A DNA stretch of 64,000 nt from Dendrobates tinctorius. Taxonomy: Eukaryota. The stretch is taken from contig NW_027361731.1 of assembly GCF_039654945.1 (NCBI RefSeq), forward strand, positions 22,134,001 to 22,198,000, read 5' to 3'. Of this stretch, positions 537 to 58,400 are shown piece by piece. Position numbers and translations under genes: made by a program. How positions within the stretch are numbered: position 1 is the stretch's first letter; each line of letters opens with the position of its first letter. Below the pieces are notes generated by a model that worked only from the letters and a program-made list of their open reading frames with translations, ran no database searches and was not told where the DNA came from.

Positions 537-15235
<14,699 letters not shown>

Positions 15236-18279: not shown

Positions 18280-19471
18280 GGCTAGTTTCACACTTGCTTT
18301 TTTTTGCAGCGCGTTTTTCCCGCAAAAAAACGCATTGAAAAAACGCATACAAAAGCATACAACTGCTGCGTTTTTTTCAAGCATTTTTATGAGCATGCAT
18401 GAAAAAAACGCAGCGTTTTTATGCGTTTGTATGCGTTTTTAGTGCGTTTTTACCGCGTTTGCGTTTTTTCCAAACATTAGGTGGCCCCTCACACTAACCC
18501 AANNNNNNNNNNNNNNNNNNNNNNNNNNNNNNNNNNNNNNNNNNNNNNNNNNNNNNNNNNNNNNNNNNNNNNNNNNNNNNNNNNNNNNNNNNNNNNNNNN
18601 NNNNNNNNNNNNNNNNNNNNNNNNNNNNNNNNNNNNNNNNNNNNNNNNNNNNNNNNNNNNNNNNNNNNNCTAACCCTGACCCTAACGCAAACCCTTAACC
18701 AAACCATACCCTGATNNNNNNNNNNNNNNNNNNNNNNNNNNNNNNNNNNNNNNNNNNNNNNNNNNNNNNNNNNNNNNNNNNNNNNNNNNNNNNNNNNNNN
18801 NNNNNNNNNNNNNNNNNNNNNNNNNNNNNNNNNNNNNNNNNNNNNNNNNNNNNNNNNNNNNNNNNNNNNNNNNNNNNNNNNNNNNNNNNNNNNNNNNNNN
18901 NNNNNNNNNNNNNNNNNNNNNNNNNNNNNNNNNNNNNNNNNNNNNNNNNNNNNNNNNNNNNNNCCTAACCCTAACCCTAACCTTGACCCTGACCCTAACC
19001 CTAACCCTTAACCAAACCATACCCTGATCCTAACCCTAACCCTGACCCTGACCCTAACCCTATCCCTAACCCTAACCCTAAACCCCCTTAACTAACCCTA
19101 ACTCTAACCCAAACCCCTAAATTCCATTGTCTAAACTAATGGTAAAAAAAACGCATGTGCAAAAAAACGCATACAAAGCATGCCAATGCGCACATATGCT
19201 CACCATAGACTTATAATGGGTGTCTTGCTGTAAAAAAACGCATTGCGCGCGCATGCGTTTTTTTGAGGCAAGTCGGACGCCCAAAAAATGCAACAGGTTG
19301 CATTTTGTGCGCCCGAGCGCATACCGCAAAAAAACGCATGCGCGGAAAAACGCGTACAAACGCATGTGTATGCGCACATAAGCGCATCCCATGCAAAGTA
19401 TAGGGAAAAAAAACGCATGCGCTATTTAGCGCTAAAATACCGAGAAAAAAAACGCAAATGTGAAACCAGCC
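18280..19471. mobile_element. Harbinger-like MITE carrying a degenerate (CCCTAA)n array
   Basis: TIR ggctagtttcaca / tgtgaaaccagcc with TAA TSD. Empty site tttaTAAccttgg at about 28865. Confidence 0.85.
18494..19120 (+). repeat. Interstitial telomere-like repeat (CCCTAA/CCCTGA variants) with two N blocks (18503-18669, 18716-18963)
   Basis: Direct reading of hexamer repeats around the N runs. Confidence 0.85.
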
Positions 19472-21450
19472 TAACCTTGGCCATATCTGTGCCTTGCCAC
19501 AATTTTGTCTCTGAGCTCCTTGGCCAGTTCCTTTGACCTCCTGATTCTTATTTGGTCTTACAAGCACTGTGAGCTGTGAGGTCTTATATAGAGAGGTGTG
19601 TGTCTTGCAAATCAAGTCCTATCAATTTAATTACACACAGCTGCACTCCAAAGAAGGAGTAGAACCATTTCAAGGAGGATCACAAGGAAATGGACAGCAT
19701 GTGACTTAAATATGAGTGTCCAAGCAAAGGGTCTGAATACTTATGACCATGTGATATTTCAGTTTTTCTCTTTTAATAAATTTGCCAAAATTTCTACATT
19801 TCTGTTTTTTGTCAGTTAAGATGGGGTGCAGAGTGTACATTAATGAGAAAATGTACTTTTTTGAATTTACCAAATGGCTGCAATGAAACAGAGTGAAAAA
19901 TTTAAAGGGGTCTGAAAAATTTCTGTACCCACTGTAATGAGGCGGATGGAGTCACTGTGGATGCCATGTGGCTTCCTATGTCTATCTTTCTAGGCATGCA
20001 TAAAAGCTCAGTCAACCACAGTTTTGTGCACCTCTGAAAAGAACATCTCCAAACTGATTCTAGAGTAACTCTGCTGCCGCATTATAGTGAATAACTTGGA
20101 GGTCTCATCTGAATCCTGTCACTTAGATTTTTAGATGTAAACCCCAATGTAAGTGATCAGGGAAGAGCGTCGGCTCAAATGTTATGGAAAATGTTCCCTA
20201 CAAAAGCTTTAAATCAATAAAAAAAAAAGCAAGTTGCCACTCGGGTCCATCAACTGTCAATGGAAATATAGGTGGCTTCCACGATACTGGTAGCACAAAG
20301 GCTCTGGAAAAGCCCTATGGCTCCTCACCTCCCAAAAGAAAAGCAAATTCTGCGCTCCCAAATCCAAATGTCCCCTCCTTTCTGATCACCACAGTGTGTC
20401 TAAACCATATTTAGCGTCCACATGTTTGTCATTTCTGCAGCGATGACAGCCCACCTACTTTACAGTTGTGTGTTGTGAGGCAGTGACCAGTGTCACAGAT
20501 AGGGGTCGTTGTGTATTCTCCCCAGGATGCGTATGGAGGCCATGAGAGTGCATTGCAGTCACAGGTGTAGCTGTGATTGTAATGCAGACTAAAAATAAGT
20601 GTTAGTCTTGGGGATGCTGGTGTCCAGGGTGTCACACCGCGGCCGCAGGTCCCGCCGCGGCCCCCACTGGTTCCGGCTCCCCTGCTGCTGCCATCCCGGT
20701 CCCTGGCGGCTTGCACGCCGCAGTCTCGCCTGCCCCGGTCCTCACCACGGCTCTCCCGTTACTCTTACCCTGCACTCGCTCCTGCCCGGTATCCTCTGCT
20801 CCAAACAGGCGTGCGCCCCTGCCCGGCTTCCTGCACCTCGACGGGCGCGCGTCCACACTGAAGTCTGGAGAGTGCGCACCCTCCATTCCCTTTGAGCGCA
20901 CGCGCCCTCCTCAGCCTGCGCCAGCTAGGGTCGTGACCCGGAAGTCCTTGATCAGATGCCCTATATCAGGCCGTCTCTTCCTCCTGATGGTGCCTGGTGA
21001 TCGCTCGAGCCCTGCTTGTGATCCTGGCCCCTTTGTCTCTGTTCGCACCCCTGCTCCCAACCTGTCCTCAGCTAATAGTGCCTCTCCGCTGTTCTCTTTC
21101 TTAGGATCCGGAGTTCCGAGGCTCTGTTCCGCCCCGTCCTGGTATCCCAGCTGTGTATCCATCCAGTCCGCGTCTGCTGCCTGTCGTTCCACCCGTGTCC
21201 CTGATCTGTCCGCCTGCCGTGTTCCTCTCCTAGGGCGATTACCTGCCGATCTCTCTTGTGTTCCGTCGGGTCACCGAGGCCCTCTCCCTGGGTACCAGCT
21301 GCCGTGGTGATAGTTACCCGCGGGCCTGCCCCAAACACTCCCTGTATAGGGGGTGGTCCACCTGGTCAGCTCGCCCGTGGGAGGTTCGTTGTCAGGGTCC
21401 AGCGGGTCCACTCCCGGAGTAATACCAAAGTCTCACAGAATCACCTGGCC

Positions 21451-22477
21451 CTGGATCCCGCTGGTACCCCGACCCCGACCCAAAAGGAACTTTTGTTCCT
21501 TCGAGAAAACCAGCCGAGGATCATGTCGTTCCTCAAGACCATGGAGTCCCGTCTATCCGCTTTACAACCCTCCGATCTGGGGACTGCCTCTCAGATCACC
21601 GGTCTCCAGCAGGAGCTCGCCCAGCAGCGCGACACTCAGGCCCATATTTTGAATTATATGGCCTCAGTAGATAACCGCCTGCTAGCTCTTCAGACCGCAG
21701 CGGCAGCCCCAGTCCAGGCGGCAGTTTCGCATCTGTCCCCCTCGGTTGGCAAAACCCCCGCGTTATAGCGGTGACCCCAAGCTGTGTCAGGGGTTCCTTA
21801 ACCAATGCCAGCTACATTTTGAATTGTCGCCTCTGCAGTATCCCACCGACCGGGCCAAAGTAGCCTTTATGATATCCCATTTGGAGGGCGAGGCACTAGC
21901 CTGGGTAAACCCCTTGTGGGAACGTGACGATCCGATCGTCTCCCAGCTTGCGACCTTCTTGGAGAATTTTCGTAAAGTCTTCGATGAGCCCGGCTGCCTG
22001 GTCTCAACCGCTGAGTCCTTATTTAACCTCCGCCAGGGTACTCTCTCTGTGGGACAGTACGCCATCCAGTTCCGCACGTTGTCATCCTAGCTTGGATGGA
22101 ACAACGAGGCCCTGGTAGGGGCTTTTTGGCGCGGTTTGTCTGCTCGGATTAAAGACGAGTTGGCTGGGAGAGACACACCTACGTCTTTGGAGGACCTCAT
22201 CTCTCTGGCAACACGAATCGATCTGCGTTTTCAGGAGCACTCCCTCGAAGCCGCCAGGGAGAGAAGACCTTCTCGCTTCTCCTCTACTACACGCAGCCCT
22301 CCTCGTCCGCGACCCTCCTCCGCGGCGTCTGCACCAGAGCCAATGCAGGTGGACCGACTCAGACCAGCGGAACAGCGTCGCCAGGAGAGATTTACACATG
22401 GTCTTTGTCTCTATTGTGGCAACGCCTCCCATCTCCTGCGTTCCTGTCCGGTGAGGCCGGGAAACGCCTCCGCCTAG
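21451..22477 (+). pseudogene. Chromovirus gag
   Basis: PPRYSGDPKLCQGFLNQC, AKVAFMISHLEGEALAW, LRQG..SVGQYAIQFR, PEPMQVD and CCHC knuckle [14 protein letters not shown]. Frameshift near 21745 and TAG at 22088-22090. Slippery GGGAAAC at 22459-22465. Confidence 0.88.
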
Positions 22478-25412
22478 GACAGGTAAGAGAGGCCTCCCTA
22501 GGTGGTGTCAGTGATACCTCTCTACCCTTGACCCTTTCTGTTTTGTTTGTTCTGGGTTCTAAGCGTTTTTCCGAGGTAGCCTACATTGATTCTGGCGCTG
22601 CCGGGAATTTCATCCAACTCGAGGCGGTGAAAAGATTGCAGATACCTGTCAGGTCCTTGGAGTCTCCCCAGCAGTTAGCTTCAGTCGACGGTGTTCCCCT
22701 GCATGAGACCGTTACCCTGGTCACCGAAGAGGTGGAGTTACAGGTCGGGATCTTGCACCGAGAGAAGATAGCCTTCTTCGTATTGCCTTCGTTATCACAC
22801 ACCTTGCTTCTAGGTCTTTCTTGGCTAAGAATACACGAACCTACCCTGGATTTGCGATCCGGAGACATTCTTCGCTGGGGTCAGTCCAGCCAGACTAAGT
22901 GCCTTCGTCCGGTACAGCCTCTCAAAACTATGCTACCTGCCTCGGGCCCCACGGGTCTGCCCTCGGCTTATTGGGCTTTTGCCAACGTTTTCAGCAAAAA
23001 GGAGGCAGAGACTCTCCACCCGCACCGGCCATATGATTGCTCGATCGATCTGGTCCCAGGTTCAACTCCGCCCCGGGGGCGAAGCTATCCTCTGAATCCT
23101 CTCGAATCACCAGCCATGACAGAGTACGTTCAAAAGAGCTTGGCAAGAGGCTTTATCCGGAAGTCATCTTCACCCGCCGGAGCAGGTTTCTTTTTTGTCA
23201 AGAAGAAAGATGGGTCTCTTCGTCCTTGTATCGACTATCAGGGTCTTAATGAAATCACTATCAAGAACAAGTACCCACTTCCTCTCATTCCTGAGTTATT
23301 TGATCGGCTGCGAGGGGCACGAATCTTTACCAAACTGGACCTCCGTGGAGCCTACAACCTCGTCCGTATTCGCTCCGGAGATGAATGGAAGACCGCTTTC
23401 AACACCAGGGATGGCCACTACGAGTATCTCGTCATGCCCTTCGGTTTGTGCAATGCTCCCACGGTATTCCAGGAATTTGTAAACGACATTTTCCAAGACC
23501 TTTTGTACTCCTGTGTGGTAGTATATCTGGACGATATCCTCGTCTTCTCTCCTGACCTGCCTACCCACAGGAGGAATGTCCGACAAGTACTGTCACGCCT
23601 GAGAGAGAATCGACTGTATGCTAAGTTGGAGAAATGCGCCTTCGAACAGACCTCCCTTCCGTTCTTAGGTTACATCATCTCTGACTCTGGCTTGCGCATG
23701 GACCCGGAGAAACTATCTGCGTGCTCAACTGGCCACGACCTCATGGCATGAAAGCCATTCAGCGATTACTTGGTTTCGCAAATTACTACCAGCAGTTCAT
23801 TCCTCATTTTTCCACCTTGACTGGTCCTATTTCCTCTTTGATCCGTAAGGGAGCCAATCCTCATGTCTGGTCCTCCGAAGCCGAGAATGTCTTCTTGTCT
23901 CTGAAACAAGCCTTCGCCTCGGCACCCATGTTCCATCGCCCAGAGGCCAACAAACCTTTTTATCCTCGAGGTCGATGCTTCCGCGACTGGGGCCAGTGCA
24001 GTTCTATCTCAGAAATCTCCCTCCGGTAGGCTCGTTACGTGTGGGTTTTTTTCCAAAACCTTCTCTACTTCGGAACGAAACTATTCTACTGGAGACAGAG
24101 AACTGCTCACCATTAAGTTAGCTCTGGAGGAGTGGAGGTATTTACTGGAGGGAGCGGTCCATCCATTTACGATTTACACGGACCATAAGAACCTGGCTTT
24201 CATTCGATCGGCACAGAGACTCAACCCTCGGCAGGCCCGGTGGTCCCTGTTCTTCGGCCGATTTGATTTTGATCTGCACTTTCGTCCCGGCAACAAGAAT
24301 CTTAAAGCCGACGCTCTGTCCAGGTCCTTTCTCTCAGCAGATATGGAGGAGGAACCCATGCACATCTTGGAGCCATCCAGGTTCATCACGGTGGCATCGC
24401 TCTCCTTAGTGTCGTCACCTTCGGGTAAGACTTTGGTGCCCGAGAGGAATCGAAGACGGGTCTTGCGCTGGGGGCATACTTCCAAACTTGCTGGTCATGT
24501 CGGATTTAAGAAGACACTTGTCCTTGTGTCCCGTTACTACTGGTGGCCGACTCATCTCCGGGATGTCCGAGATTTTGTTGCCTCCTGTCCGTCCTGTGCC
24601 AAAAACAAGGTGCCCAGGCAGCTGCCTTCCGGTCTCCTTCATCCACTTCCAGTCCCCTCAGCTCCTTGGCAACACGTTGCAATGGATTTTATTACCAATC
24701 TACCCAAGTCTGCGGATTGTACTGTCATCCTTGTGGTGGTAGACAGGTTCTCGAAGATGGCACATTTCATCCCTCTCCCAGGGTTACCTTCTGCACCCGA
24801 TCTGGCGAAACTTTTCATTCATCACATCTTCCGTCTTCACGGATTGCCCCAACATATCGTTTTGGACAGAGGAGTCCAATTCACCTCTCGATTTTGGAGA
24901 GCCCTATGCCGGTCTATGGATGTCACACTCGACTTCTCCTCATCTTACCATCCACAGTCCAATGGTCAAGCGGAGCGGACTAACCAGAATCTGGTAAACT
25001 ATCTCCGGCACTTTTCTAATGCCCACCAGAACGACTGGTCTGACTTACTCCCATGGGCTGAATTCGCCTACAATAGTCATATCAGCGAATCGTCTGGCAA
25101 GTTTCTTTTTTTTGTCGACCACGGGCAACACCCGGGTGTACCTTTACCGGTTCCTCCTGCCTCGGGTGTACCGGCGGCTGATCTTCAATCTGGGGATTTC
25201 TCCAGGATCTGGCAGGAGACCAAGGCCGCTCTCGAGTTAGCACGTGACATGATAAAGAGACACGCTGAGAAAAGGCGCTTGGATGCCCCGCCATATCATC
25301 CGGGGGATAGGGTTTGGCTATCGTCTAAGTTCATTCGTCTAAAGGTCCCTTCACATAAACTGGGACCCCGCTACATTGGGCCTTTTGAAGTTTTGACTCG
25401 TATTAACGATGT

Positions 25413-28102
25413 TGTTACGGCGGCGGAACACGCTTAAAAAATATAAATAAACGTGTTCGCCGTCCGGGGTCCACCGTGCGGCAGGTGTAATAACCGCTGC
25501 TGAAAAGGCAGAGCACCAGGACGGTAATGTGCACAGGAAGAACTGAACCTGGTGCACAAAAGCAAACTCTGTTAAAACTCACAGAGCTGTACCCAAAACA
25601 CAAATTCAAAAAACGCTGTGTCTGTATTAGCCTCACAGACACTCAGCAGCACACGTGCCGTAGCCAAAGCCGGAGTAGTTAAGAACAGCACTACACCCGA
25701 ATGGACTTACCGTAGGTAGGCGTGTGCACGGCGTCGCAACTGCGAACGCCAAAAGCGGGCTGCAAGCGCGATATAGCAGACGCGAAGCAGGACGCTGGCT
25801 GCTGCAACTGGCGGAGTGGCCATGCGCACTTTTTATAGCGTACGGGACCTGCTGGAAATCTCCAGAGTCCCGAACGTAACCAATCAAATCAGGAGCAGGA
25901 CCTGAGCACCTGACTCCTGAACTCCAGTGAAAGCTAGTCCCGTGAGCATGCTCAGAAGCAGGGAAAAAGGACTTAGCCTCTGGAGACAAATGTGAGAATC
26001 TGGGTTGCTGCATAAGCATAGAATGGCCCAGATTCCTAACATTACCCCCCCCTAGGGCCCCCCCTCCCTGAACCCTCCGATCCACCAGCCTGTGTCCGAC
26101 AGCAGCACAGGTCTCAGACTCGTTAAAAGGCGAGCCTGGTCTCCCAGTAGGTGAAACCAAAAACCGGGAGATGCGGACGGTATCGGGGGAGACAAGATCA
26201 CCAGGTCTCAGGAGAGACACCCGGGACACAATGGGAGTTTTAGGAGAAGGCCGCCGTGTATCGGCGGGTGTAGCCACTCTCCATTCGGGAAGACTATCCC
26301 GAGCACATAGGGTGCATGCCCGAATAAATTTTTTTATATCCAGAGCCCTGTGCGGCCACCAATACGAACCGGCCAGTGACTTCGTGGTCTGCATATAGCC
26401 ACGATGGCCGTCCGCATTGGGCGCGTGTGCCCACGCGAGAACTTTAGGCCGCTCGCGAGGAGGGACAAAAGTCTCGCCTACCGATTCGCAATCAGACCAT
26501 TGCGAGGCGCTGTCTTCCTGAGAAGCAGCAGGCAGATGGTGACAACCGCATATGGTCTCCTGCGCCGGACATGTCTCCGAAATGGCGCGAGACACCTCCA
26601 TGGGCTCAGGGGGTAGAACCTCTGGCTCGAGCTGATCCAAAGGCTCAAAAAATTTGGGAGCCGGAGTACCTCTACGCTTGGTGTGAGCACGCTCCAAACC
26701 ACGCTCCGAAAAACAGAGGTCGATACGGGAGGAGATGGAGATTAGCTCCTCCAGAGTGGTGGGGATCTCCCTAGTGGAGAGAGCATCCTTTACGTGCTCA
26801 GCTAGTCCTCTCCAAAAAACTGGGATAAGTGCCTTGTCAGACCACTCTAACGCAGACGCCGGTGTCCGAAAACGGACAGCGTATTGACTTACTGAGAGTG
26901 ATCCTTGAGACAAGGCCAGCAATTGGAGTGAGGTATCGTGTGTAACCCGTGGACCGAGAAACACCTGCTTAATAGCAGTAAGGTGATTAGCTGCGGTCCG
27001 AACATCCAGGTCATCACGCTCCCAAAGTGGCGTTGCCCATTCCAGCGCCTTGCCCGACAATAGGGAAATAATAAAGGCCACCTTGGCCCGTTCTGTTGGG
27101 AATTGCGCAGCCAGCAGCTCCAGATGGATTGAGCACTGGCTGATAAAACCCCTACAGGAGGCGCCATCCCCAGAATATTTCTCAGGTAACGGGAGGCGGG
27201 TAACTGTCGGCGCAAGGGCGGACATGGACATCCGACCCACTGCGTCCGTAAGTGCCTGGACAGCAGCATCCGTGGCCTGCGAAGCTGCGAGGGCCTTCTC
27301 AAGGGTAGTCAAGCGAGCCTCGAGCTGTCGTATGCATTGCACGAGTTGCTGCTGTTCTGCCATTTAGCCAGACGCTGGTGCTAGTATTATGTTACTGCGG
27401 CGGAACACGCTTAAAAAAGTATAAATAAATGTGTTCGCCGCCCGGGGTCCACCGTGCGGCAGGTGTAATAACCGCTGCTGAAAAGGCAGAGCACCAGGAC
27501 GGTAATGTGCACAGGAAGAACTGAACCTGGTGCACAAAAGCAAACTCTGTTAAAACTCACAAAGCCAAAGCCGGAGTAGTTAAGAACAGCACTACACCTG
27601 AATGGACTTACCGTAGGTAGGCGTGTGCACGGCGTCGCAACTGCGAACGCCAAAAGCGGGCTGCAAGCGCGATAAGGCAGGCGCGAAGCAGGACGCTGGC
27701 TGCTGCAACTGGCGAAGCTTGAGCGCGCTGGCGCTAGCGCGCACACTGGCTGTATCCCAATCACTCACACATTCGTATTATCAGAGGGAAGGGGTTTCAT
27801 AATAAGTCATTCACCAGTCCAAGCATCCATCACCAAACACACAGCAGCAAGTATGGAAAATACTAGCGCATGGCATAGCGGCCTTGGCACTTTTTATAGC
27901 GTACGGGACCTGCCGGAAATCTCCAGAGTCCCGAACGTAACCAATCAAATCAGGAGCAGGACCTGAGCACCTGACTCCTGAACTCCAGTGAGAGCTAGTC
28001 CCGTGAGCATGCTCAAAAGCAGGGAAAAAGGACTTAGCCTCTGGAGACAAATGTGAGGATCTGGGTTGCTACATAAGCATAGAATGACCCAGATTCCTAA
28101 CA
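25413..28102 (-). mobile_element. Non-autonomous LTR mini-element 1 (Gag plus integrase HHCC only), nested in the chromovirus integrase
   Basis: TSD GATGT (25408-25412, 28103-28107). LTRs 25413-26041 and 27390-28102, both TG..CA. PPT next to 26041. Interior 1348 bp. Confidence 0.92.
25633..27363 (-). CDS. Gag-HHCC fusion ORF of mini-element 1 (576 aa, uninterrupted, reads into the 3' LTR)
   Basis: Sushi/PEG10-like capsid region (LPEKYSGD..CRGFISQC..AKVAFIISLLSGKALEWA), then WAH..GH.G..YWWP..CTLCAR. No protease, RT, RNase H or DDE core. Confidence 0.85.
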   Translation of the reverse strand: MAEQQQLVQCIRQLEARLTTLEKALAASQATDAAVQALTDAVGRMSMSALAPTVTRLPLPEKYSGDGASCRGFISQCSIHLELLAAQFPTERAKVAFIISLLSGKALEWATPLWERDDLDVRTAANHLTAIKQVFLGPRVTHDTSLQLLALSQGSLSVSQYAVRFRTPASALEWSDKALIPVFWRGLAEHVKDALSTREIPTTLEELISISSRIDLCFSERGLERAHTKRRGTPAPKFFEPLDQLEPEVLPPEPMEVSRAISETCPAQETICGCHHLPAASQEDSASQWSDCESVGETFVPPRERPKVLAWAHAPNADGHRGYMQTTKSLAGSYWWPHRALDIKKFIRACTLCARDSLPEWRVATPADTRRPSPKTPIVSRVSLLRPGDLVSPDTVRISRFLVSPTGRPGSPFNESETCAAVGHRLVDRRVQGGGALGGGNVRNLGHSMLMQQPRFSHLSPEAKSFFPASEHAHGTSFHWSSGVRCSGPAPDLIGYVRDSGDFQQVPYAIKSAHGHSASCSSQRPASRLLYRACSPLLAFAVATPCTRLPTVSPFGCSAVLNYSGFGYGTCAAECL

Positions 28103-28602
28103 GATGTCTCCTATAAACTGCGGCTCCCCGCCTCTCTTCGCATCCCTAATTCATTCCATGTGTCCCTTCTAAAACCGGTCATCCTCAATTGCTTCCATGC
28201 CTCTGCTACCCAGTCGCCTCCGCCTGTGTCCGCTGATGATGAGTTCGAGATTAAAGACATTCTTGCTATGAAAAAGCAACGAGGGAGGATCTTTTTTCGG
28301 GTCGATTGGAAGGGCTTTCGTCCAGAGGAAAGATCCTGGGAGCCTCGGGAGAATATCCAGGCTCCTCGAATTTTGGCTAAGTTTTTCTCCAGTCTGCGGA
28401 GGGGGGCGCGTGAGGGGGGGGTACTGTCACACCGCGGCCGCAGGTCCCGCCGCGGCCCCCACTGGTTCCGGCTCCCCTGCTGCTGCCATCCTGGTCCCTG
28501 GCGGCTTCCACGACGCAGTCTCGCCTGCCCCAGTCCTCACCGCGGCTCTCCCGTTACTCTTACCCTGCACTGGCTCCTGCCCGGTATCCTCTGCTCCAAA
28601 CA

Positions 28603-29329
28603 TCTGTGGAGCTCAGCCACAGTGATCTGTAAAGTGCTGCGGAATATGTTAGCGCTATATAAAATAAAGATTATTATTATTATTATTATTATTATCTTGG
28701 GGTTCTTCTTTACCTCTCTCACAAAGGTTCTTCTCCCACGATTTCTCAGTTTTGCTGGACGGCCAGGTCTAGAAAGACTTCTGATGGTCCCAAACTTCAT
28801 CCATTTAAGGATTATGAAGGCCATTGTGATCTTAGGAACCTTGAGTACTGTAGAAATTCTTTTTATAACCTTGGCCATATCTGTGCCTTGCCACAATTTT
28901 GTCTCTGAGCTCCTTGGCCAGTTCCTTTGACCTCCTGATTCTTATTTGGTCTTACAAGCACTGTGAGCTGTGAGGTCTTATATAGAGAGGTGTGTGTCTT
29001 TCCAAATGAAGTCCTATCAATTTAATTACACACAGCTGCACTCCAAAGAAGGAGTAGAACCATTTCAAGGAGGATCACAAGGAAATGGACAGCATGTGAC
29101 TTAAATATGAGTGTCCAAGCAAAGGGTCTGAATACTTATGACCATGTGATATTTCAGTTTTTCTCTTTTAATAAATTTGCCAAAATTTCTACATTTCTGT
29201 TTTTTGTCAGTTAAGATGGGGTGCAGAGTGTACATTAATGAGAAAATGTACTTTTTTGAATTTACCAAATGGCTGCAATGAAACAGAGTGAAAAATTCAA
29301 AGGGGTCTGAAAAATTTCTGTACCCACTG
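28603..29329 (-). mobile_element. Tc1/mariner fragment (duplicate of the 17980-19934 element)
   Basis: Transposase N-terminus KRISTVLKVP..IILKW.KFG..PGRPAKL..VREVKKNP..TVAEL. TIR ends at 29329 followed by TA. Confidence 0.85.
28629..28693 (+). mobile_element. 65-bp LINE/SINE 3' tail inserted in Tc1
   Basis: gtaaagtgctgcggaatatgttagcgctatataaaataaag plus (ATT)n, flanked by ATCT. Related tails lie on the minus strand at about 6003-6055 and about 53444-53493. Confidence 0.7.
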
Positions 29330-29868
29330 TAATGAGGCGGATGGAGTCACTGTGGATGCCATGTGGCTTCCTATGTCTATCTTTCTAGGCATGCATAAAA
29401 GCTCAGTCAACCACAGTTTTGTGCACCTCTGAAAAGAACATCTCCAAACTGAGTCTAGAGTAACTCTGCTGCCGCATTATAGTGAATAACTTGGAGGTCT
29501 CATCTGAATCCTGTCACTTAGATTTTTAGATGTAAACCCCAATGTAAGTGATCAGGGAAGAGCGTCGGCTCAAATGTTATGGAAAATGTTCCCTACAAAA
29601 GCTTTAAATCAATAAAAAAAAAAGCAAGTTGCCACTCGGGTCCATCAACTGTCAATGGAAATATAGGTGGCTTCCACGATACTGGTAGCACAAAGGCTCT
29701 GGAAAAGCCCTATGGCTCCTCACCTCCCAAAAGAAAAGCAAATTCTGCGCTCCCAAATCCAAATGTCCCCTCCTTTCTGATCACCACAGTGTGTCTAAAC
29801 CACATTTAGCGTCCACATGTTTGTCATTTCTGCAGCGATGACAGCCCACCTACTTTACAGTTGTGTGT

Positions 29869-31377
29869 TGTGAGTCAGTGACCAGTGTCACTGATAGGGG
29901 TCGTTGTGTATTCTCCCCAGGATGCGTATGGAGGCCATGAAAGTGCATTGCAGTCACAGGTGTAGCTGTGATTGTAATGCAGACTAAAAATAAGTGTTAG
30001 TCTTGGGGATGCTGGTGTCCAGGGTGTCACACCGCGGCCGCAGGTCCCGCCGCGGCCCCCACTGGTTCCGGCTCCCCTGCTGCTGCCATCCAGGTCCCTG
30101 GCGGCTTCCACACCGCAGTCTCGCCTGCCCCGGTCCTCACCACGGCTCTCCCGTTACTCTTACCCTACACTCGCTCCTGCCCGGTATCCTCTGCTCCAAA
30201 CAGTCGCGCGCCCCTGCCCGGCTTCCTGCTCCTCGACGGGCGCGCGTCCACACTGAAGTCTGGAGCGCGCGCACCCTCCATTCCCTTTGAGCGCACGCGC
30301 CCTCCTCAGCCTGCGCCAGCTAGGGTCGTGACCCGGAAGTCCTTGATCAGATGCCACCGTCTCTTCCTCCTGACGGTGCCTGGTGATCGCTTGAGCCCTG
30401 CTTGTGATCCTGGCCCCTTTGTCTCTGTGCGCACCCCTGCTCCCAACCTTTCCTCAGCAAATAGTGCCTCTTCGCTGTTTTCTTTCTTAGGATCCGGAGT
30501 TCCGAGGCTCTGTTCCGCCCCGTCCTGGTCTCCCAGCTGTGTATCCAGTCCGTGTCTGCTGCCTGTCGTTCCACCCGTGTCCCTGATCTGTCCGCCTGCC
30601 GTGTTCCTCTCCTAGGGCGATTACCTGCCGATCTCTCCTGTGTTCCGTCGGGTCTCCGAGGCCCTCTCCCTGGGTACCAGCTGCCGTGGTGATAGTTACC
30701 CGCAGGCCTGCCCCAAACACTCCCTGTATAGGGGGTGGTCCACCTGGTCAGCTCGCCCGTGGGAGGTTCGTTGCCACGGTCCAGCGGGTTCACTCCCGGA
30801 GTAATACCAAAGTCTCACACAGGGCAGAGTTGGGAAAACTTGCTCTGGGGTTTTTGTATTTTGAAACAGACTGCAGGATGGTAGTCTTGCAGTCCGTTTC
30901 ATTCCATGCCCAGGTTTTCTATGTGGCTGAAGACCACGGATCCCAGTTAAAATCCCTGCAGTATAGTGTTTGGGTGTGTCAGGGCCAGAGTCAGTTGGTG
31001 CTTGCTAGTGTACAGAACAGTCGGCTTTGCAGAGCTCTACCTGTGTGAAGCAACACAAGCCAAGGCAGCTGAATAGCCTGGCACCCACCACCTACACAGC
31101 AGTGCAGTCGTCCACGGCAATGGGTATCGGAGGTGAACTGTTTTGTGCCTGGTGGCGGACTAGCGTGTTTAATGGCTGCAAACTGGAGGGCATGGCTGCA
31201 GATTGCGATCCGGAGGATACTGGGTGCTATGTAGTGCTGTGAACTGGACATTAATGCTGTGCACTTGTGTGAATTGGACATTTTATGCTGTGAAGTAACA
31301 CATTAAAGAGACTTTTGTGTTGGAACTTTGCTGGGTCACTGCCTCAACACTGCGCAGCGTGCTTCCATGGCACTACA
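29869..31377. mobile_element. Solo LTR (TGTGAG..CTACA, TSD GTGT) hosting the chromovirus insertion; its left end is duplicated at 20474-20629
   Basis: GTGT at 29865-29868 and 31378-31381. Empty site gttgtGTGTctaca at about 62837. Confidence 0.75.
30025..30819 (+). mobile_element. Solo LTR of the chromovirus
   Basis: Near-identical to 20630-21437. TSD CAGGG at 30020-30024 and 30820-30824. Confidence 0.93.
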
Positions 31378-32670: not shown

Positions 32671-33025
32671 TGAACTTCATCTGGGACCCCATGCAGCTGA
32701 AAAATATTCTGTGTTAGGGAAAGCGGAACGCACTAAATATTAAATAATAGAAAGTGCGTACGCCGCCCGGGGTCCACCGTGCAGAGATGTTAAACTTCTG
32801 CTATGTAATGGCAGACGCACAATATGGCGTTATATCGCACGTGGGTTGAATGTCACCCGGTGTGTGCTGGCGAGCTCTGTTAAGTTCACAGAGGCGCCTA
32901 AGGCATAAACGTAAATGCTGAGCTTGTTGACCTCACAGATCTCAGCGGTGTGCACTCACTGTATATGGTCACAGGACTCAGGCCCAAGACACAGGGTCAG
33001 AGTCCGTCTAGACCTACCGTGCGTG

Positions 33026-37950: not shown

Positions 37951-37953
37951 CAG

Positions 37954-41852: not shown

Positions 41853-42043
41853 TCCCAGATTTTTCTTTCTCTGTCACTATTAAAAAATGACCTTTCAATA
41901 TTAGGGCTTTTAGATCTGCCATACTGTGCCCAGGTCTAGAGAAGTGTATTCCTACAGGCGGATAATAGATAAAGTCCCCATACCCAACACAAAGCAGGGC
42001 TAGAAGATCATGGAGTCTTCTTCATGTACATCCTCCATATACC

Positions 42044-48662: not shown

Positions 48663-49449
48663 TTAGCGAGTACAGCTGAGAGTTCAGAGTTTCCAACATG
48701 GTCGATTAACCCATGTTCTGCCAAAAGAAATAAACACCATTAAAAAGAAGTGCTTTTCAGCACAGGAGTAGGAGCAATTGGACGCTGCGGTCTTCCGGCT
48801 ACTTTCTGTTGCGGAAACCCTGTGACACCTAACAAAACATTATTGGAAACGTGATCATTTACCGAAATGTGCTCGAACTTTTCTTGGGAACACAAATCCG
48901 AATTTGAGATCGGCGAACATTTTCCGACAAGTTCGCACATCTCTACCCCCTGTATCGTACATTGCACGTTGATGCCTTCCTGGACAATTATTTTTCTTTT
49001 TTTTTTCATGGATTCCTAACAAAATGAGTCCTGTGACCTCACTATAGGCACCGTCTTTTGTCCTCAGAACGGACGGGGTCCTGAGATGCCATTTTTTGGC
49101 GTCTTATCTGCTGTCTTCCGGTCACTTCTTGTAACTGTTTTGCAGCTTTAGAAACCTGAAGGGGTTAAGAGAAGTTAAAATACTGAACAAATGAACAGTG
49201 AGTTGTTTTTCATTTTTGTGCATTATGTTCCAACGTTTGCACTTTTTAGGATTGGTTACGGGACGTGTCCACCTGAAAAGACACGGTGTGCACATGTCCT
49301 TACACTATACCAGCATCACTGCTCCTGTATCTTGTTTTCCCATGGTATTTTGTATGAATCTTCATCAGCTGATCTTCCTTCCATTTAGGATCCTGGCAGA
49401 TACAATCGGTATAATTATCTTCTAGAAGATTTACTTTAAACTTTAACGA

Positions 49450-52400: not shown

Positions 52401-55400
52401 CAGTGAAGTGAAAGGAGTTCACTGTGAGACACTGAGCTGAGCAAGCACATGCAGCTCAGTTTCTCTGCTGGATGGCATGCTGTAAGGTCGCATCCTGCAA
52501 CAATGCAGTCTGGTTGAGGCAGAGGAAGATGCCACATGGCATAAATTGATTATTATCTTAGTGGACAGGTGAGGAATATGGCTGTTTATTATTTTAATTC
52601 TGTTACAGGGGACACTGGCTTCAGCGGACTGGGCAATGAGGTGTGTATGGTTTTATTTTGGTTTGTTAAAGGAGTCTGTGTCATTCTTTCAATTAAAGGA
52701 CTTAATTCTTGGTCTGTTTTTACAAATACAAAGGCATTTTTTATATACAATTTGACTATGGGGTTAGTAATGGGGACATCTTATAGACATCTCTCCATTA
52801 CTAACCTCTGGGCTTGATGTCACCTGACAATGCAAAGGTGTCATCAACCCCCACAACCATCAACCCACTTGCCTCCGCACCAGGGCAAGTGAGAAGATCT
52901 AGATTAAGTACCAGATTTGGCGCATCCTGTGGATGAGCATTTTCTGGGGTGGCTGAGAGCTGATGTTTTAAGTCCAGGATGGAGCCAATAGACATGGCCC
53001 CTTCCCAGGCTAATAATATCAGCCCACAGCTGTCTGCCTAGCCTTTGCTGGTTATTAATTACAGGGCGACCCTACGTCATTTTTGGGTGGCCCCCATTAT
53101 AATAACCAGTAAAGGTCAAGTATTCAACTGAGAGCTGATATTTATAGCCTGGCAAGCTTCATGGGCATTACCCCTTTCCCAGGCTATAAACATCAGCCCA
53201 CAGCCATCTGCTTTACCTCTGCTGGTTATGAAAATTAAACCCATGCAATTAGTACACACTGTACTAATTATGTGTGACTGACCTCTTTATATCTATCTGT
53301 TCTATTCTGTCGCATCACACGGTGAATCTACTGTACGCGGCAGATGAACTACCAGCTTTACATCAAATACAGTGGGGAAAAAAGGATTTAGTTGAAAGAA
53401 TGGAATTACCAGTGCCGTAATCCATCTGTGCGACATTTGTTCATAATAATAATCTTTATTTATATAGTGCCAACATATTCCACAGCACTTTACAATTCAA
53501 CAGTTCATATACAACAGTCATAACAAAGTTAACGATAATACAATAATTAATGCAAAGATATTGATGACCCTGCCCATAAGAGCTTACAAGCTACAATGTG
53601 GTGGGAGTGACACAAAGTACAGGGGCTTATTTACTATAATGGTTCAATCATCTTGAGGAATTGGGGGTGGATAAAGGTCACCAGCCAATATTTGTAGTTC
53701 TTTTGGGTGCGATGGAGTTTGATGCAGGGTTATGAGGCAACCACTCCTGCTGAAGAGCAGAGGAAAATGACTCCATGCAGTGAGAGCAGGCCTATGAACT
53801 GTGATGACCTCAGATCATTGCAGTTCAGCTTGAGAAATCCAGGTGCAATGAGTCATTCTACCAAGCTTTTTAATGTGAGTGGTCGCCTCAGGTAACCGCT
53901 GATGCTGATAAGCAAATGTCGCACAGATGGATTCCGGCGTGGGACACTTTGGATTCTTTCAATTTTGGACAGGTGAGGGATATTGTTGTTTTTTTATTTT
54001 TGTTTCTTTACAGGGGATAATGGCTTCACTGGATTAGGTGTCAAGGTGAGTATTGTTAGGAGCGGCGGAACACAACAAATAGAAATATAGCTAAGGTGAG
54101 TTCGCCGCTCGGGGTCCACCGTGCGGCAGATGGTAAAACCGCTGCTAGGAGGTGGCAGAGCTATAGGGTGGTAATGTGCACAGGGTTAGATATCACCCAG
54201 GTGCACTAAGCAACCTCTGTTGAACTCACAGAGAAGCTATACAAATAATAAATATGACAATGCTGAGCCTGTTAGCAACACAGGGGCTCAGCGGCACACA
54301 AGCGGTAATTAGTCAACGGAGTAGTTATATATAGCGGTACTACATCCGCAAAGACCTACCGTATATAATTGTGTGAACAGCGTTGCAACTGCAAACGCAA
54401 GAGTAAGTTGCTACTGCAGCGCGGCGTAGATGGAGCCTCAGAGACACCGCTAAAACGCAGGCACGATGTCAGACACTAAGCTGCTGTGCAATGGCGCGCT
54501 GGCGCTGATACTGGCTAACTCAAACACTCACACATTCGTAGTATCAAAGGAATGGGGGTTTCAAATGAGTCATTCACCAGAACATGCATCCATCAACAAA
54601 CATACAGCAGCATGTATGACTATACTAGCGCATGGCGGAACAGCCATGTGCACTTTTTATAGCGAACGGGACCTTCCGGAAACCTCCAGGAGTCCAAGAA
54701 GAGCCAATAGGATCCAGAGCAGGACCTGAGCACCTGACTCCTGAACTCCAATAGGAGGTGGTCCCATGAACATGCTCAGATGATGGTATAAAGGACTTAG
54801 CCTCTGGAGAGAGTTGCTGTGAGATAATCTCCTCTGCAATCCCTTCTGCAGTAGCAGATGAACAAGAGACTGCAGCATGTGAGAATCTAGGTTTCTGCAT
54901 AGACGTGGTAGAAACCAGATTCCTAACATTACCCCCCTCCTAGGGCCCCCTCCTCCCTGAGCTTTCCGATCCATCACCCTGCGCCCAGCGGTGGCATAGG
55001 GCTCAAACTCGTCCAAAGGCGAGCTTGGTGTCCTGGTAGGTGACATGGTAACCCGGGACACGTGGAAGGCATCAGCGGAGGCAAGGTTGCCAGGTTTCAG
55101 GAGGGAAACTTGGGAGATGGCAGGAGTGGGAGTTGCAGTGGAACGCCGCAGTGTGTCGATGGACGTCGCCACACCCCGCCTAGAGAGGCTATGCCGAGCA
55201 CATGAGGTGCATGCCTGAATGAACCTCTTAACATCCCGGGCCCTGTGAGGCCACCAATAAGCTCCAGCCAACAACGTCGAAGTTTGCATATAGCCACGAT
55301 GGTTGTGCGTATTGGACACGTGTGCCCACGCGAGGATTTTAGGCCTCAGATGAGGAGGGACAAAAGTCTCGTCGACCGGCTCGGAATCCAACCATTGCGG

Positions 55401-58400
55401 GGCGCTGACTTCCTGAGAAGCAGTGTGCACACGATGACAATCGCAAATGGACTCCCGAGCCGGGGGTGTATCAAAACTGGCACTAGACACCTCCATGGGC
55501 TCCGGGGGTAGGACCTCTGGTTCAGGCAACTCCAGAGGCACAAAAAATTCGGGAGCCGGAGTACCTCTCTGTTTGGAGTGAGCACGCTCCAAACCACGCT
55601 CTGAGAAACGGAGGTCAATGCACGAGGAGATAGTTATTAACTCCTCCAGGCTGGTAGGGATCTCTCTCGTAGAGAGAGCATCCTTGACGTGCTCCGCTAA
55701 TCCTCTCCAAAATACTGGGATGAGGGCCTTATCAGACCACTCCAACTTGGACGCCAGTGTCTGAAAACGGACGGCATACTGGCTGACCGAGAGGGATCAC
55801 TGGGACAGAGAGAGAAGTTGTAGAGAGGTGTCGTGTGTGACCCATGGACCGAGAAACACCTGCCTGATAGCAGTTAGCAGGTGGGCTGCGGACCGACTAT
55901 CCGGATCACCACGCTCCCATAAAGGCGTAGCCCATTCCAGAACCTTGCCCAACAGTAGGGATCTAATAAATGCCACCTTTGCCTGTTCCGTAGGAAATTG
56001 CGCAGCCAGCAGCTCCAGGTGAATTGAGCACTGGCTGATAACGCCCCTACAGGAGGCGCCATCCCCGGAAAACTTATCGGGCAACGGGAGGCGGGTAACT
56101 GTCGGCGCAAGGGTGGACACGGACATACGCACTACCGCATCCGTTAGAGCCTGGACAGCAGCATCAGTGGCTTGTGCAGCGGAGAGAGCCTTCTCCAGAG
56201 TAACCAACCGGTTCTCAAGCTGCCGTATGCACTGCATCAGTTGCTGCTGATCTGCCATCTCTAGCCAGACCCTGGCGCTAGTATAATGTTAGGAGCGGCG
56301 GAACGCACCAAATAAAAATATAACTAAGGTGCGTTCGCCGCTCGGGGTCCACCGTGCGGCAGATGGTAAAACCGCTGCTAGGAGATGGCAGAGCTATAAG
56401 GCGGTAATGTGCACAAGGTTAGATATCACCCAGGTGCACTAAGCAACCTCTGTTCAACTCACAGAGAAGCTATACAAATAATAAATATGACAATGCTGAG
56501 CCTGTTAGCAACACAGGGGCTCAGCTGCACACAAACAGTAATTAGTCTACTGAGTAGTTATATATAACGGCACTACATCCGCAAATACCTACCGTACATA
56601 CTTGTGTGAACAGCGTTGCAACTGCAAACGCAAGAGTAAGCTGCTACTGCAGCGCGGCGTAGATGGAGCCGCAGAGACACCGCTAAAACGCAGGCGAGAT
56701 GTCAGACGCTAAGCTGCTGTGCAATGGTGCACTGGCGCTGATACTGGCTAACTCAAACACTCACACATTCGTAGTATCAAAGGAATCGGGGTTTCAAATG
56801 AGTCATTCACCAGAACATGCATCCATCAACAAACATACAGCAGCAAGCATGACTATACTAGCGCATGGCGGAACAGCCATGCGCACTTTTTTTAGCGAAC
56901 GGGACCTTCCGGAAACCTCCAGAAGTCCAAGAAGAGCCAATAGGATCCGGAGCAGGACCTGAGCACCTGAACTCCAATAGGAGGTCGTCCCATGGTCAGA
57001 TGATGGTATAAAGGACTTAGCCTCTGGAGAGAGTTGCTGTGAGACAATCTCCTCTGCAATCCCTTCTGCAGTAGCAGATGAACAAGAGACTGCAGCATGT
57101 GAGAATCTAGGTTTCTGCATAGATGTAGCAGAAACCAGATTCCTAACAAGTATAATGTGATTTTTTTTTCATTTTTATTTTTTTAATTTTATAGACAGCG
57201 GGGGCTTAATACAACGCTCAATATTGTCCCCTGCTTGGGCTGATCACAGGCAGAGCAGGGTACAATGATGTGAGCTGTTTTTAACACCTGGAGCTGGGGA
57301 TCAGCACGAACAGTACCGCCGATTCCCAGGTGCTGGTACGTGTCACTGATGACACACGGATGTCATCCATGTGTCATTAGTGTGCAAGACTATTTGTGGC
57401 CCTTTCTGCTGCTAACAAACAGTCATGTCAGGGTGGCTTGCCCAAAGACACACGGTCCGTGGAAACACACTGACGTTTGCGCAGATCCATTCACTTTAAT
57501 GGGTCTAAATGTTTAAGTGTCTCCGGTACGTAAGAAAACTGTCACCACACGTACTGGACACTGGCGTGTAAAGGAGGCCTTTAGGGGGTACTCTCATTTC
57601 CAAGATCCTATCCCAAAATATAGTTGGTGCAATAATAGCAAATACCTCAAATTGGAAATGTGGTATAGTTTCCTGATTCTCTGTCGCTTACCCCATGTCC
57701 AGGGCATTGCAGTAGCTTAGGTATCCATCGTTATAACCACTAGCAACTAACCGTCACTATATCAGTGGTAGCAACCATGGATACCTAAGCTTGTGCAATG
57801 CTCTGCACATTGGGTGAGCAACACAGCGAGTCAGAAGAACTATACTACATATTCCCTAATATTATTATTACACCTTCTACATATTGGGATAGTTGACCAG
57901 AGATGGGAATACTCCTTTAAGAATCTTACATGTTTTTATGGTGTATATTTTCATCTGTTGCTATAGATTGTAATATAATAAAGCTTATTTTTAATCCTCC
58001 CTTTATTGCTTCAAACTTTTCTGCGTTTGTGTATTATGTTTGTCGATTGTACTTTAGAGGTTCAGTACCATGGGATTTGTGAATAGGTGCCTCACCACTG
58101 TCTTAGGTCATAGTTTCATTATACTTTGAGTTGTATAGAATTATGTATATAGAAATTATATAAAATATAAGGCATTGATATTGAAAAATAATAAAATCAG
58201 TTTCATTCTTGGCAGGTGACTGTGGTGTCAAACCAGATACCTATGAAAAGCATGTCATTATTCCAGCTATACCTCCAGCCCTTCAGAGCAAAAATCAATC
58301 CTCGGAGCCTTTGGATTCATCACCGACTGTTAAGCAAAATGAAAGCGGCAAAAGTGATGTTGAGCATCAAATAATTCCCACAAAGAAGAAAGCATTTTCC

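What the first reader, a model, noticed from the sequence alone, without database searches (positions are those of the whole stretch)
27378..27898. Tf1-style self-priming signals with compensatory change in both mini-elements
Seen: there is no TGG-type tRNA primer site. In element orientation TATAAAAAG (27898-27890) is followed 29 nt later by GCGCTAGTATT (27869-27859), complementary to AATACTAGCAC just inside the 5' LTR (27388-27378; 10/11). In element 2 the pair is GCGCTAGTATA (56864-56854; also 54631-54621, 30 nt after TATA) and TATACTAGCGC (56285-56275; 11/11). One position differs in both partners, preserving pairing. Known: Tf1/sushi-group elements prime reverse transcription with their own first about 11 nt, cleaved by RNase H. 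Inference: these RT-less elements maintain a self-primer processed in trans by a helper.
Basis: partly seen in the sequence, partly recalled or inferred. Interest (0 to 1): 0.7.

Follow-up and report, generated by a model that had tools for sequence, protein, structure and literature searches.

The report
Self-priming signal in frog mini-retrotransposons
Two decayed, reverse-transcriptase-less LTR retrotransposons in a poison-frog-like genome carry the known Tf1/sushi type of primer site, which pairs with the predicted first 9-11 bases of the element's own RNA instead of with a tRNA; this is a well-supported but ordinary member of a known kind.

Summary
Both mini-elements (25413-28102 and 54054-57148, minus strand; TG..CA LTRs, 5-bp target duplications) have an 11-nt site 1 nt after the 5' LTR. 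It is complementary to an 11-mer lying 29-30 nt after a TATA box in the LTR: 10/11 in element 1, 11/11 in element 2.

Related copies fetched from Ranitomeya imitator and Dendrobates tinctorius keep the same arrangement. Positions 9 and 11 of the duplex change on both sides and stay paired. Two fish-type relatives show a 10-11-nt pairing with quite different letters. A strong hairpin sits just before the site in every frog copy.

The internal region is a Gag fused to an integrase zinc-finger remnant, with no protease, RT or RNase H. An autonomous chromovirus in R. imitator has the same primer/site pair as element 1, so a helper acting in trans is plausible.

Self-priming is already described for the Tf1/sushi group from yeast to vertebrates, and this scan has noted it many times in this genome. 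The transcription start and the RNase H cut are inferred, not shown. Both window copies are old fossils (LTR identity 95-96%).

Verdict: a real feature and a new member of a known kind; modest interest.

The parts
25413..28102 (-). Mini-element 1: LTR, Gag/IN-zinc-finger ORF, LTR. It is nested in the integrase gene of a larger chromovirus on the plus strand. The 5-bp target duplication ACATC lies at 28107-28103 and 25412-25408.
   Evidence: Self-BLAST; sequence reads; LTR identity 96.0%.
27390..28102 (-). 5' LTR of element 1 (TGTTAGG...GTAACA), 713 bp. U3 is predicted at 28102-27870 and R-U5 at 27869-27390.
27941..27945 (-). ATTGG (inverted CCAAT-type box), 47 nt upstream of the TATA box. An ATTGG box is kept upstream of the TATA box in the related LTRs measured, at 47 or 62 nt.
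27890..27898 (-). TATA box, TATAAAAAG.
   Evidence: A TATA-type box is present in all related LTRs, 29-30 nt before the primer 11-mer.
27859..27869 (-). Predicted first 11 nt of the transcript, the self-primer GCGCTAGTATT.
   Evidence: It makes 10/11 pairs with 27388-27378.
27397..27442 (-). U5 hairpin (GCGGCGAACAC...GTGTTCCGCCGC), ending 6-7 nt before the LTR end. It is an analogue of the U5-IR stem-loop.
   Evidence: Per-copy folds of -20 to -34 kcal/mol in the frog copies. RNAalifold finds 3 pairs with double changes.
27378..27388 (-). Primer-binding site AATACTAGCAC, 1 nt after the 5' LTR.
26053..27363 (-). Fused ORF of Gag (Ty3_capsid, PEG10/RTL type), an integrase H2C2 zinc-finger remnant and a tail. 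It has no PR, RT, RNase H or integrase core. In this copy the stop is lost, so the frame runs on into the LTR.
   Evidence: Pfam; PEG10 capsid hit 7lga; 68% identical and collinear with D. tinctorius P0001; dN/dS 0.23.
26045..26069 (-). Polypurine tract (AGGGAGGGGGGGCCCTAGGGGGGGG), followed by TAA and then the 3' LTR.
   Evidence: The same motif precedes the 3' LTR in element 2, L001 and L004.
25413..26041 (-). 3' LTR of element 1. It keeps the TATA box but lacks the primer 11-mer, because of a roughly 153-bp deletion between short CGCCA repeats.
54054..57148 (-). Mini-element 2, with the same architecture. Its ORF is broken into 153-aa and 362-aa pieces. The 5-bp target duplication ATACT lies at 57153-57149 and 54053-54049.
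   Evidence: LTR identity 95.4%.
56854..56864 (-). Self-primer GCGCTAGTATA in the 5' LTR of element 2, 30 nt after the mutated TATA box (TAAAAAAAG, 56894-56886).
56275..56285 (-). Primer-binding site TATACTAGCGC of element 2, 1 nt after the LTR end. It is an 11/11 complement of the primer.
   Evidence: The MFE and centroid folds pair nt 1-13 with it.
54621..54631 (-). Copy of the primer 11-mer in the 3' LTR of element 2, 30 nt after an intact TATAAAAAG (54661-54653).

Best explanation
Both elements are internally deleted, Gag-only derivatives of a frog chromovirus of the Tf1/sushi kind, and they keep that group's cis signals for self-primed reverse transcription.

Proposed mechanism:
1. RNA polymerase II starts about 30 nt after the LTR's TATA box.
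2. The first 9-11 nt of the RNA fold back onto the complementary site 1 nt after the 5' LTR. A U5 hairpin next to the site probably helps.
3. The RNase H of a helper element's RT cuts off this 5' piece.
4. The freed 3' end of the piece primes minus-strand DNA.

The minis have no RT or RNase H, so cutting and extension must be done by proteins of an autonomous relative, while they supply their own Gag.

Shown:
- the complementarity;
- its fixed position relative to the TATA box and to the LTR end;
- its conservation, with compensatory changes, across copies and species;
- the lack of pol in the minis;
- an autonomous relative with the same signals.

Inferred:
- the transcription start;
- the cleavage;
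- the priming;
- the trans-complementation.
For: - Duplexes are 10/11, 11/11, 10/11 and 11/11 in four frog copies from at least two genomes. Positions 9 (A-T to G-C) and 11 (T-A to A-T) change on both sides. Each primer fits its own site at least as well as any other copy's site, and slid controls give 1-5 pairs.
- The first T of the TATA box is always 29-30 nt before primer G1, and an ATTGG box lies upstream.
- The site is always 1 nt after ...AACA.
- Few shuffled LTRs reach the observed match: 86/3000 and 3/3000.
- For element 2 the MFE and centroid folds pair the RNA 5' end with the site, z = -4.9. For element 1 only the centroid does.
- A U5 hairpin lies next to the site in all frog copies, with compensatory pairs.
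- More distant relatives show the same logic with other letters. L007 has GCCAGATTGTT/AACAATCTGGC, 11/11. The Gambusia locus L010 has GCCAGATTAT/ATAATCTGGC, and its LTRs are 98.6% identical.
- Pfam finds only Gag and Integrase_H2C2 in the minis.
- L004 is gag-PR-RT-RNaseH-IN-SH3_Tf2-1-Chromo with the same primer/site pair as element 1.
- The minis share one architecture with D. tinctorius P0001, and the two window copies have separate target duplications.
- Literature: the first 11 bases of Tf1 RNA pair with the primer-binding site and RNase H cuts between bases 11 and 12 (PMC7175516). Self-primers are described for the Tf1/sushi group from yeast and vertebrates (PMC6317226, PMC4600332).
Against: - No direct mapping of the RNA 5' end was possible. 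The only public runs that hold this sequence are kept as contigs, which cannot show starts.
- Element 1 and L004 share a C.A mismatch at position 2. If the primer were copied into the site each cycle, as happens for primers in retroelements, that mismatch should be erased. The working duplex may therefore be only 9 bp there, or transcription may start 2 nt later.
- The MFE fold of element 1 does not form the duplex.
- No frog tRNA set was available to rule out a better tRNA match.
- Only four frog copies have both partners, and they are related, so the covariation rests on two positions.
- Both window copies are damaged: LTRs are 4-5% diverged, element 1's 3' LTR lacks the R start, and element 2's TATA box and ORF are broken.
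Confidence: 0.8

Rival explanations
1. The 5'-end/post-LTR complementarity is real and selected, but it serves another RNA function, such as circularising the leader for packaging, dimerisation or control of gag translation. Priming would then use a different, unrecognised primer.
For: - Long-range 5'-leader pairings are common in retroelement RNAs (general knowledge).
- The duplex sits 15-25 nt before the gag ATG.
- No cleavage product or cDNA intermediate has been seen here.
Against: - The site occupies exactly the canonical primer-binding position, 1 nt after the LTR. No other candidate primer site, whether TGG-type or otherwise, is present there.
- The length (9-11 nt) and the neighbouring U5 hairpin match the experimentally proven Tf1 arrangement (PMC7175516).
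- The proteins are of the Tf1/sushi-like chromovirus type.
Confidence: 0.08
2. The elements are primed by a host tRNA or tRNA fragment, and the match to the LTR 11-mer is incidental.
For: - Most LTR retrotransposons use tRNA primers, and other families in this same genome carry tRNA-Ser or tRNA-Leu sites (scan notes; unchecked).
- No frog tRNA set could be compared here.
Against: - No TGG lies at or within 5 nt of the LTR end.
- The downstream TGGCTA..ATGG stretch overlaps the gag start and differs by indels between copies.
- The site differs between copies at three positions, and two of these co-vary with the LTR-internal 11-mer. A fixed tRNA could not explain this.
Confidence: 0.05
3. Chance complementarity, inherited by descent in a few related copies.
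For: - The four frog copies are relatives, and most duplex positions never vary.
- For element 1 alone, 3% of shuffled LTRs reach 10/11 somewhere in the LTR.
Against: - Both variable positions inside the 9-bp duplex core (9 and 11) changed on both sides.
- The match lies at the TATA-predicted start in every copy.
- Unalignable fish relatives have their own 10-11-nt match at the same site.
Confidence: 0.03

Closest known systems
Tf1/Tf2 of Schizosaccharomyces pombe (self-primed Ty3/gypsy chromoviruses)
   Same: - An 11-nt complement links the RNA 5' end and a primer-binding site next to the 5' LTR.
- There is no tRNA site.
- A stem-loop in U5 lies beside the site.
- The integrase of the autonomous relative has a chromodomain and an SH3_Tf2-1 domain (PMC7175516).
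   Different: - The host is a frog and R-U5 is much longer (about 480-580 nt).
- The copies in the window lack RT and RNase H, so the cut would have to be made in trans.
- Cleavage and priming are proven for Tf1 and only inferred here.
- In one subfamily the duplex is 9+1 bp with a conserved mismatch.
Vertebrate sushi-type elements (sushi-ichi and relatives; Butler et al. 2001, J Mol Evol 52:260, as cited in PMC4600332 and PMC6317226)
   Same: - They are vertebrate chromoviruses with a Gag of the PEG10/RTL type (Pfam PF16297, PF03732; PDB 7lga hit).
- They have predicted self-priming in place of a tRNA site.
- The fish loci L007 and L010 show the same signature.
   Different: - I could not read Butler et al. 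itself, so I did not check whether dendrobatid or gag-only derivatives are covered there.
- I made no RT tree to place this family inside the group.
TR-GAG / LARD-type non-autonomous LTR retrotransposons of plants
   Same: - Both are LTR elements that keep a gag ORF, or none, and lack pol.
- Both rely on an autonomous family for RT and IN while keeping the primer-binding site, the PPT and the LTR signals (PMC8704663 and PMC13570524 use the term TR-GAG).
   Different: - This is an animal host with a self-primer instead of a tRNA site.
- The ORF is a Gag fused to an integrase HHCC zinc-finger remnant. It appears conserved (dN/dS 0.2) between copies from two genomes.

Membership tests
LTR retrotransposon (Ty3/gypsy, Metaviridae) | Direct long terminal repeats with TG..CA ends, a short target-site duplication, and a polypurine tract before the 3' LTR. 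| tested here: met
   LTRs are 713/629 bp and 862/875 bp and read TGTTAGG...AACA. The 5-bp duplications are ACATC and ATACT. A G-rich tract precedes the 3' LTR.
LTR retrotransposon (Ty3/gypsy, Metaviridae) | Ty3-type Gag, and pol in the order PR-RT-RH-IN. | tested here: met
   The minis carry Ty3_capsid/Retrotrans_gag and an Integrase_H2C2 remnant only. Their autonomous relative L004 has PR, RVT_1, RT_RNaseH, H2C2, rve, SH3_Tf2-1 and Chromo in that order. Its best PDB hit is Ty3 Gag-Pol 7q5b, E = 8e-67.
Tf1/sushi group of chromoviruses | A chromodomain at the integrase C-terminus. | tested here: met
   Pfam Chromo, E = 6e-12, in L004 ORF3. The minis themselves have lost it.
Tf1/sushi group of chromoviruses | No tRNA-type primer site. 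The site next to the 5' LTR is complementary to the start of R, which is the predicted RNA 5' end. | tested here: met
   Matches of 10-11/11 in four frog copies, covariation at positions 9 and 11, and a position 29-30 nt after the TATA box.
Tf1/sushi group of chromoviruses | The RNA 5' end really lies at the complementary 11-mer, and RNase H cuts after it. | not testable with these tools
   Only contig-level public runs hold the sequence, so no read starts are available.
Tf1/sushi group of chromoviruses | The RT/IN sequences fall inside the Tf1/sushi clade in a phylogeny. | not tested
The support is indirect only: the SH3_Tf2-1 domain, the PEG10/RTL-type Gag, and the sushi origin of PEG10 according to PMC10570562.
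Non-autonomous, trans-mobilised LTR element (TR-GAG-like) | It lacks RT, RNase H and the integrase core but keeps the LTRs, the primer site and the PPT. | tested here: met
   Pfam scan; tblastn with L004 pol finds only the H2C2 remnant inside the minis; cis signals as listed under parts.
Non-autonomous, trans-mobilised LTR element (TR-GAG-like) | The deleted form itself has transposed, shown by several copies with the same deletion and different target sites. | tested here: met
   Element 1, element 2 and D. tinctorius L001 are collinear across the whole internal region in single alignments of 75-79% identity. The two window copies have different target duplications.

The most novel reading that the evidence does not exclude
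The minis are not mere debris. They would be a long-lived parasitic lineage whose Gag-integrase zinc-finger (HHCC) fusion protein has been kept by selection across dendrobatid genomes (dN/dS 0.12 for Gag and 0.20 for the HHCC remnant). This would suggest that the HHCC module has a role of its own in hijacking a helper's self-primed reverse transcription or its particles. The conserved C.A mismatch at primer position 2 in one subfamily, seen in two genomes, would then mean that this subfamily works with a 9-nt self-primer or a shifted start site.
Probability: 0.2. Interest if true: 0.5.

Novelty: new member of a known kind. Interest (0 to 1): 0.3.

Why it matters
This is a clean, sequence-level confirmation that tRNA-independent self-priming, proven only in fission yeast, leaves a recognisable and co-varying signature in amphibian chromoviruses and in their pol-less derivatives. 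That helps with annotating the very repeat-rich dendrobatid genomes, because LTR-finding tools that require a tRNA primer site will miss these families. It also gives a natural series of primer/site variants. It does not reveal a new mechanism.

Tried and rejected
- RNA evidence for the start site: the look-up of sequencing runs returned only small runs kept as Logan contigs, none on record as RNA. Laying four of them showed that the LTR is highly repeated in two coded organisms. It showed no molecule starts and no contig spanning the stretch.
- tRNA comparison: ARAGORN found no tRNA gene in the window or in six loci, so no frog tRNA could be compared.
- Rfam: nothing relevant in 25300-28200.
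- A third related LTR piece in the window (41182-40898, minus strand) has ATGTAACATAG at the homologous place. It has no 5' LTR end or primer site, and no complement occurs elsewhere in the window. The RT genes next to it (35049-39175) are unrelated to this family.
- R. imitator locus L005 keeps the TATA box and a variant 11-mer (GAGTTAGTATA), but its U5 end and primer site are deleted.
- L002, L003 and L009 have gag and pol but no complete LTR, so they could not be tested.
- L008 gives only about 8 contiguous complementary bases between its site and its partial 3' LTR, so it was not counted.
- In L001 the 5' LTR has lost U3 and the start of R. Its 3' LTR 11-mer has one mismatch to the site.
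- The automatic four-way alignment misplaced a gap in the primer, so pairs were counted from fixed coordinates instead.
- The outer part of the U5 hairpin pairs in different registers in different copies, so it could not be scored column by column.
- Butler et al. 2001 and the Lin & Levin papers are not held in the library.
- A second large protein search for an RT-based placement was not run.
Full report
**What is there**

On the minus strand the window holds two short LTR retrotransposons.

- Element 1 spans 25413-28102. Its LTRs are 25413-26041 and 27390-28102 (TGTTAGG...GTAACA). Its 5-bp target duplication is ACATC.
- Element 1 sits inside the integrase gene of a larger plus-strand chromovirus, whose LTRs are 19472-21437 and 28866-30819.
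- Element 2 spans 54054-57148. Its LTRs are 54054-54928 and 56287-57148, and its target duplication is ATACT.
- The two LTRs of element 1 are 96.0% identical and those of element 2 are 95.4% identical. Both are therefore old insertions.
- The internal regions are about 79% identical to each other in one collinear alignment.
- Each internal region encodes a Ty3/PEG10-type Gag fused to a remnant of the integrase H2C2 zinc finger. No protease, RT, RNase H or integrase core is present.

**The observation**

| Copy | 11-mer after the TATA box | Site after the 5' LTR | Pairs |
|---|---|---|---|
| Element 1 | GCGCTAGTATT (27869-27859), 29 nt after TATAAAAAG (27898-27890) | AATACTAGCAC (27388-27378) | 10/11, with C.A at position 2 |
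| Element 2 | GCGCTAGTATA (56864-56854, also 54631-54621), 30 nt after the box | TATACTAGCGC (56285-56275) | 11/11 |

- Position 11 differs between the two elements on both sides and stays paired.
- Correction: the site starts 1 nt after the LTR end, not inside the LTR.
- Correction: the 5' LTR TATA box of element 2 is mutated.
- Correction: the 3' LTR of element 1 has lost the 11-mer through a roughly 153-bp deletion.
- Shuffled LTRs reach the observed match anywhere in the LTR in 86 of 3000 trials for element 1 and 3 of 3000 for element 2.
- Sliding the partner by 1-3 nt leaves 1-5 pairs.

**Other copies**

A protein search with the Gag found its closest relatives in Dendrobates tinctorius (74%) and Ranitomeya imitator. 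I fetched the DNA around them.

- R. imitator L004 has the TATA box, then 30 nt, then GCGCTAGTATT. After ...TTAACA-T comes AATACTAGCAC. This is the same pair as element 1, including the C.A mismatch.
- R. imitator L006 has GCGCTAGTGTA and TACACTAGCGC, 11/11. This is a second compensatory change, at position 9.
- D. tinctorius L001 has the element 2 site. In its 3' LTR the 11-mer carries one mismatch, and its 5' U3 is lost.
- In all copies measured, the first T of the TATA box lies 29-30 nt before G1, and an ATTGG box lies 47 or 62 nt further upstream.
- Each primer fits its own site at least as well as any other copy's site.
- More distant relatives show the same logic with unrelated letters. 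A marine-metagenome element (L007) has GCCAGATTGTT/AACAATCTGGC, 11/11. A young Gambusia affinis element (L010, LTRs 98.6% identical) has GCCAGATTAT/ATAATCTGGC.
- The host chromovirus in the window has a weaker version: TATAT at 20962, then TGCCTGGTGAT at 20991-21001, against the site at 21440-21450, 9/11.

**RNA structure**

- Folding the predicted R-U5-site RNA of element 2 pairs nt 1-13 with the site in both the MFE and the centroid structure (z = -4.9).
- For element 1 only the centroid does so.
- Every frog copy has a strong hairpin ending a few nt before the LTR end (-20 to -34 kcal/mol).
- RNAalifold on ten LTR ends finds three of its pairs kept through changes on both sides.
- This recalls the U5-IR-like stem-loop that Tf1 needs. 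I know that only from the title of Lin & Levin 1998, as cited in PMC7175516.

**Helper and trans-mobilisation**

- L004 is a near-complete element: gag, PR-RT, then RNase H-IN-SH3_Tf2-1-Chromo. It has the same LTR ends, PPT, primer and site as element 1. Its pol matches Ty3 Gag-Pol at E = 8e-67.
- The minis therefore derive from this chromovirus family by internal deletions.
- Element 1, element 2 and D. tinctorius L001 share the deletion architecture.
- The two window copies have different target duplications, so the deleted form itself transposed.
- The fused ORF is intact in element 1 and in L001. The two are 68% identical, with dN/dS 0.23 overall, 0.12 for Gag and 0.20 for the H2C2 remnant. 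This suggests selection while the lineage spread.

**Mechanism**

The most likely mechanism is Tf1-type self-priming. [quoted passage not shown] The same is proposed for Tf1/sushi elements from fungi to vertebrates (PMC4600332, PMC6317226). In the minis the cut and the extension would have to be carried out by a helper's RT/RNase H.

- Shown: the pairing, its position, its covariation, the loss of pol, and the existence of an autonomous relative.
- Inferred: the start site, the cleavage, the priming and the use of a helper.

One further point rests on my own knowledge of retroelement replication. Plus-strand synthesis copies the primer into the site. PMC11042837 reports that about half of Tf1 cDNA keeps a full-length copy of the site made this way. 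Matching changes on both sides are therefore partly a mechanical consequence of self-priming, which itself argues for that mechanism. By the same logic, the C.A mismatch shared by element 1 and L004 should have been erased. Its persistence hints that in this subfamily the working primer is the 9-nt GCTAGTATT, or that transcription starts at the third base. That base is also a good match to the TATA spacing (31 nt).

**Rivals**

- Another role for the pairing: 0.08.
- A tRNA or other host primer: 0.05.
- Chance: 0.03.

The covariation, the fixed position and the unrelated-letter cases in fish speak against the last two.

**Novelty**

- Self-priming in vertebrate sushi-type elements is in the literature.
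- This scan's own notes list many such cases in this genome. They include a follow-up reaching the same conclusion on another copy, and first-reader notes on non-autonomous ones. These are leads, not independent evidence.
- Pol-less, gag-only derivatives are known in plants as TR-GAG.
- The finding is therefore a solid new member of a known kind.
- The mildly unusual points are the conserved Gag-HHCC fusion and the conserved position-2 mismatch.

Noticed in passing
window 26053-27363 (-); L001 4001-5317: The minis' ORF is a Gag fused to an integrase H2C2 zinc-finger remnant. It is intact and collinear in element 1 and in a D. tinctorius copy (68% aa identity). dN/dS is 0.23 overall, 0.12 for Gag and 0.20 for the zinc-finger part. 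It looks like a selected fusion protein of a non-autonomous lineage.
   Followed up: partly
window 27868 / 27379 (-); L004 8806 / 9397: The C.A mismatch at primer position 2 is identical in element 1 and in the autonomous R. imitator copy. If primers are copied into the site each cycle, it should not persist. A 9-nt primer or a start 2 nt further down would explain it.
   Followed up: partly
window 57158-57149 versus 56289-56280 (-): The 10 nt upstream of element 2's 5' LTR (ACATTATACT) equal the LTR end ACA, the following T and the first 6 nt of its primer-binding site. The 5-bp target duplication ATACT is part of this stretch. It may be coincidence or a target preference. It does not fit the downstream-flank pattern reported for integrase-independent Tf1 insertions (PMC11042837).
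   Followed up: partly
window 19472-30819 (+): This is the host element of mini-element 1, an 11-kb chromovirus with 1.96-kb LTRs (97.6% identical). It carries gag (21743-22267), PR-RT (22405-23751), IN (24343-25437) and a chromodomain (28160-28930). Its proteins are 51-58% identical to the mini family's Gag and to L004's pol. It has a degenerate self-primer signature: TATAT at 20962, then 20991-21001 against 21440-21450, 9/11.
   Followed up: partly
window 25809-25816 / 27718-27870: The 3' LTR of element 1 lacks about 153 bp that the 5' LTR and both LTRs of element 2 have. The deletion lies between short CGCCA repeats and removes exactly the predicted start of R. The 3' LTR also has about 74 extra bp (25588-25661).
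   Followed up: yes
window 40898-41182 (-) and 32712-32893 (-): Two isolated pieces of a related LTR type. One is a U3/R-start piece with a TATA box and a different 11-mer, ATGTAACATAG. The other is a U5 end with the hairpin and ...CTAACA. The RT/RNase H genes between them (35049-39175, minus strand) belong to an unrelated family.
   Followed up: partly
window 41943-43400 and 58275-60254; also 15010-15182: Long tandem arrays of 30-bp units (about 47 copies) and 84-bp units (about 21 copies). One 173-bp stretch of the 84-bp array recurs at 15010-15182 with 95% identity.
   Followed up: no
window 1-8000 versus 48990-57980: Several long dispersed repeats, 90-99% identical, pair the first 8 kb of the window with 49-58 kb (for example 557-856 with 49467-49766, and 7672-7971 with 57678-57977). 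This suggests a segmental duplication or another large repeat family around element 2.
   Followed up: no
window 18503-18669 and 18716-18963: Two runs of N (167 and 248 bases).
   Followed up: no
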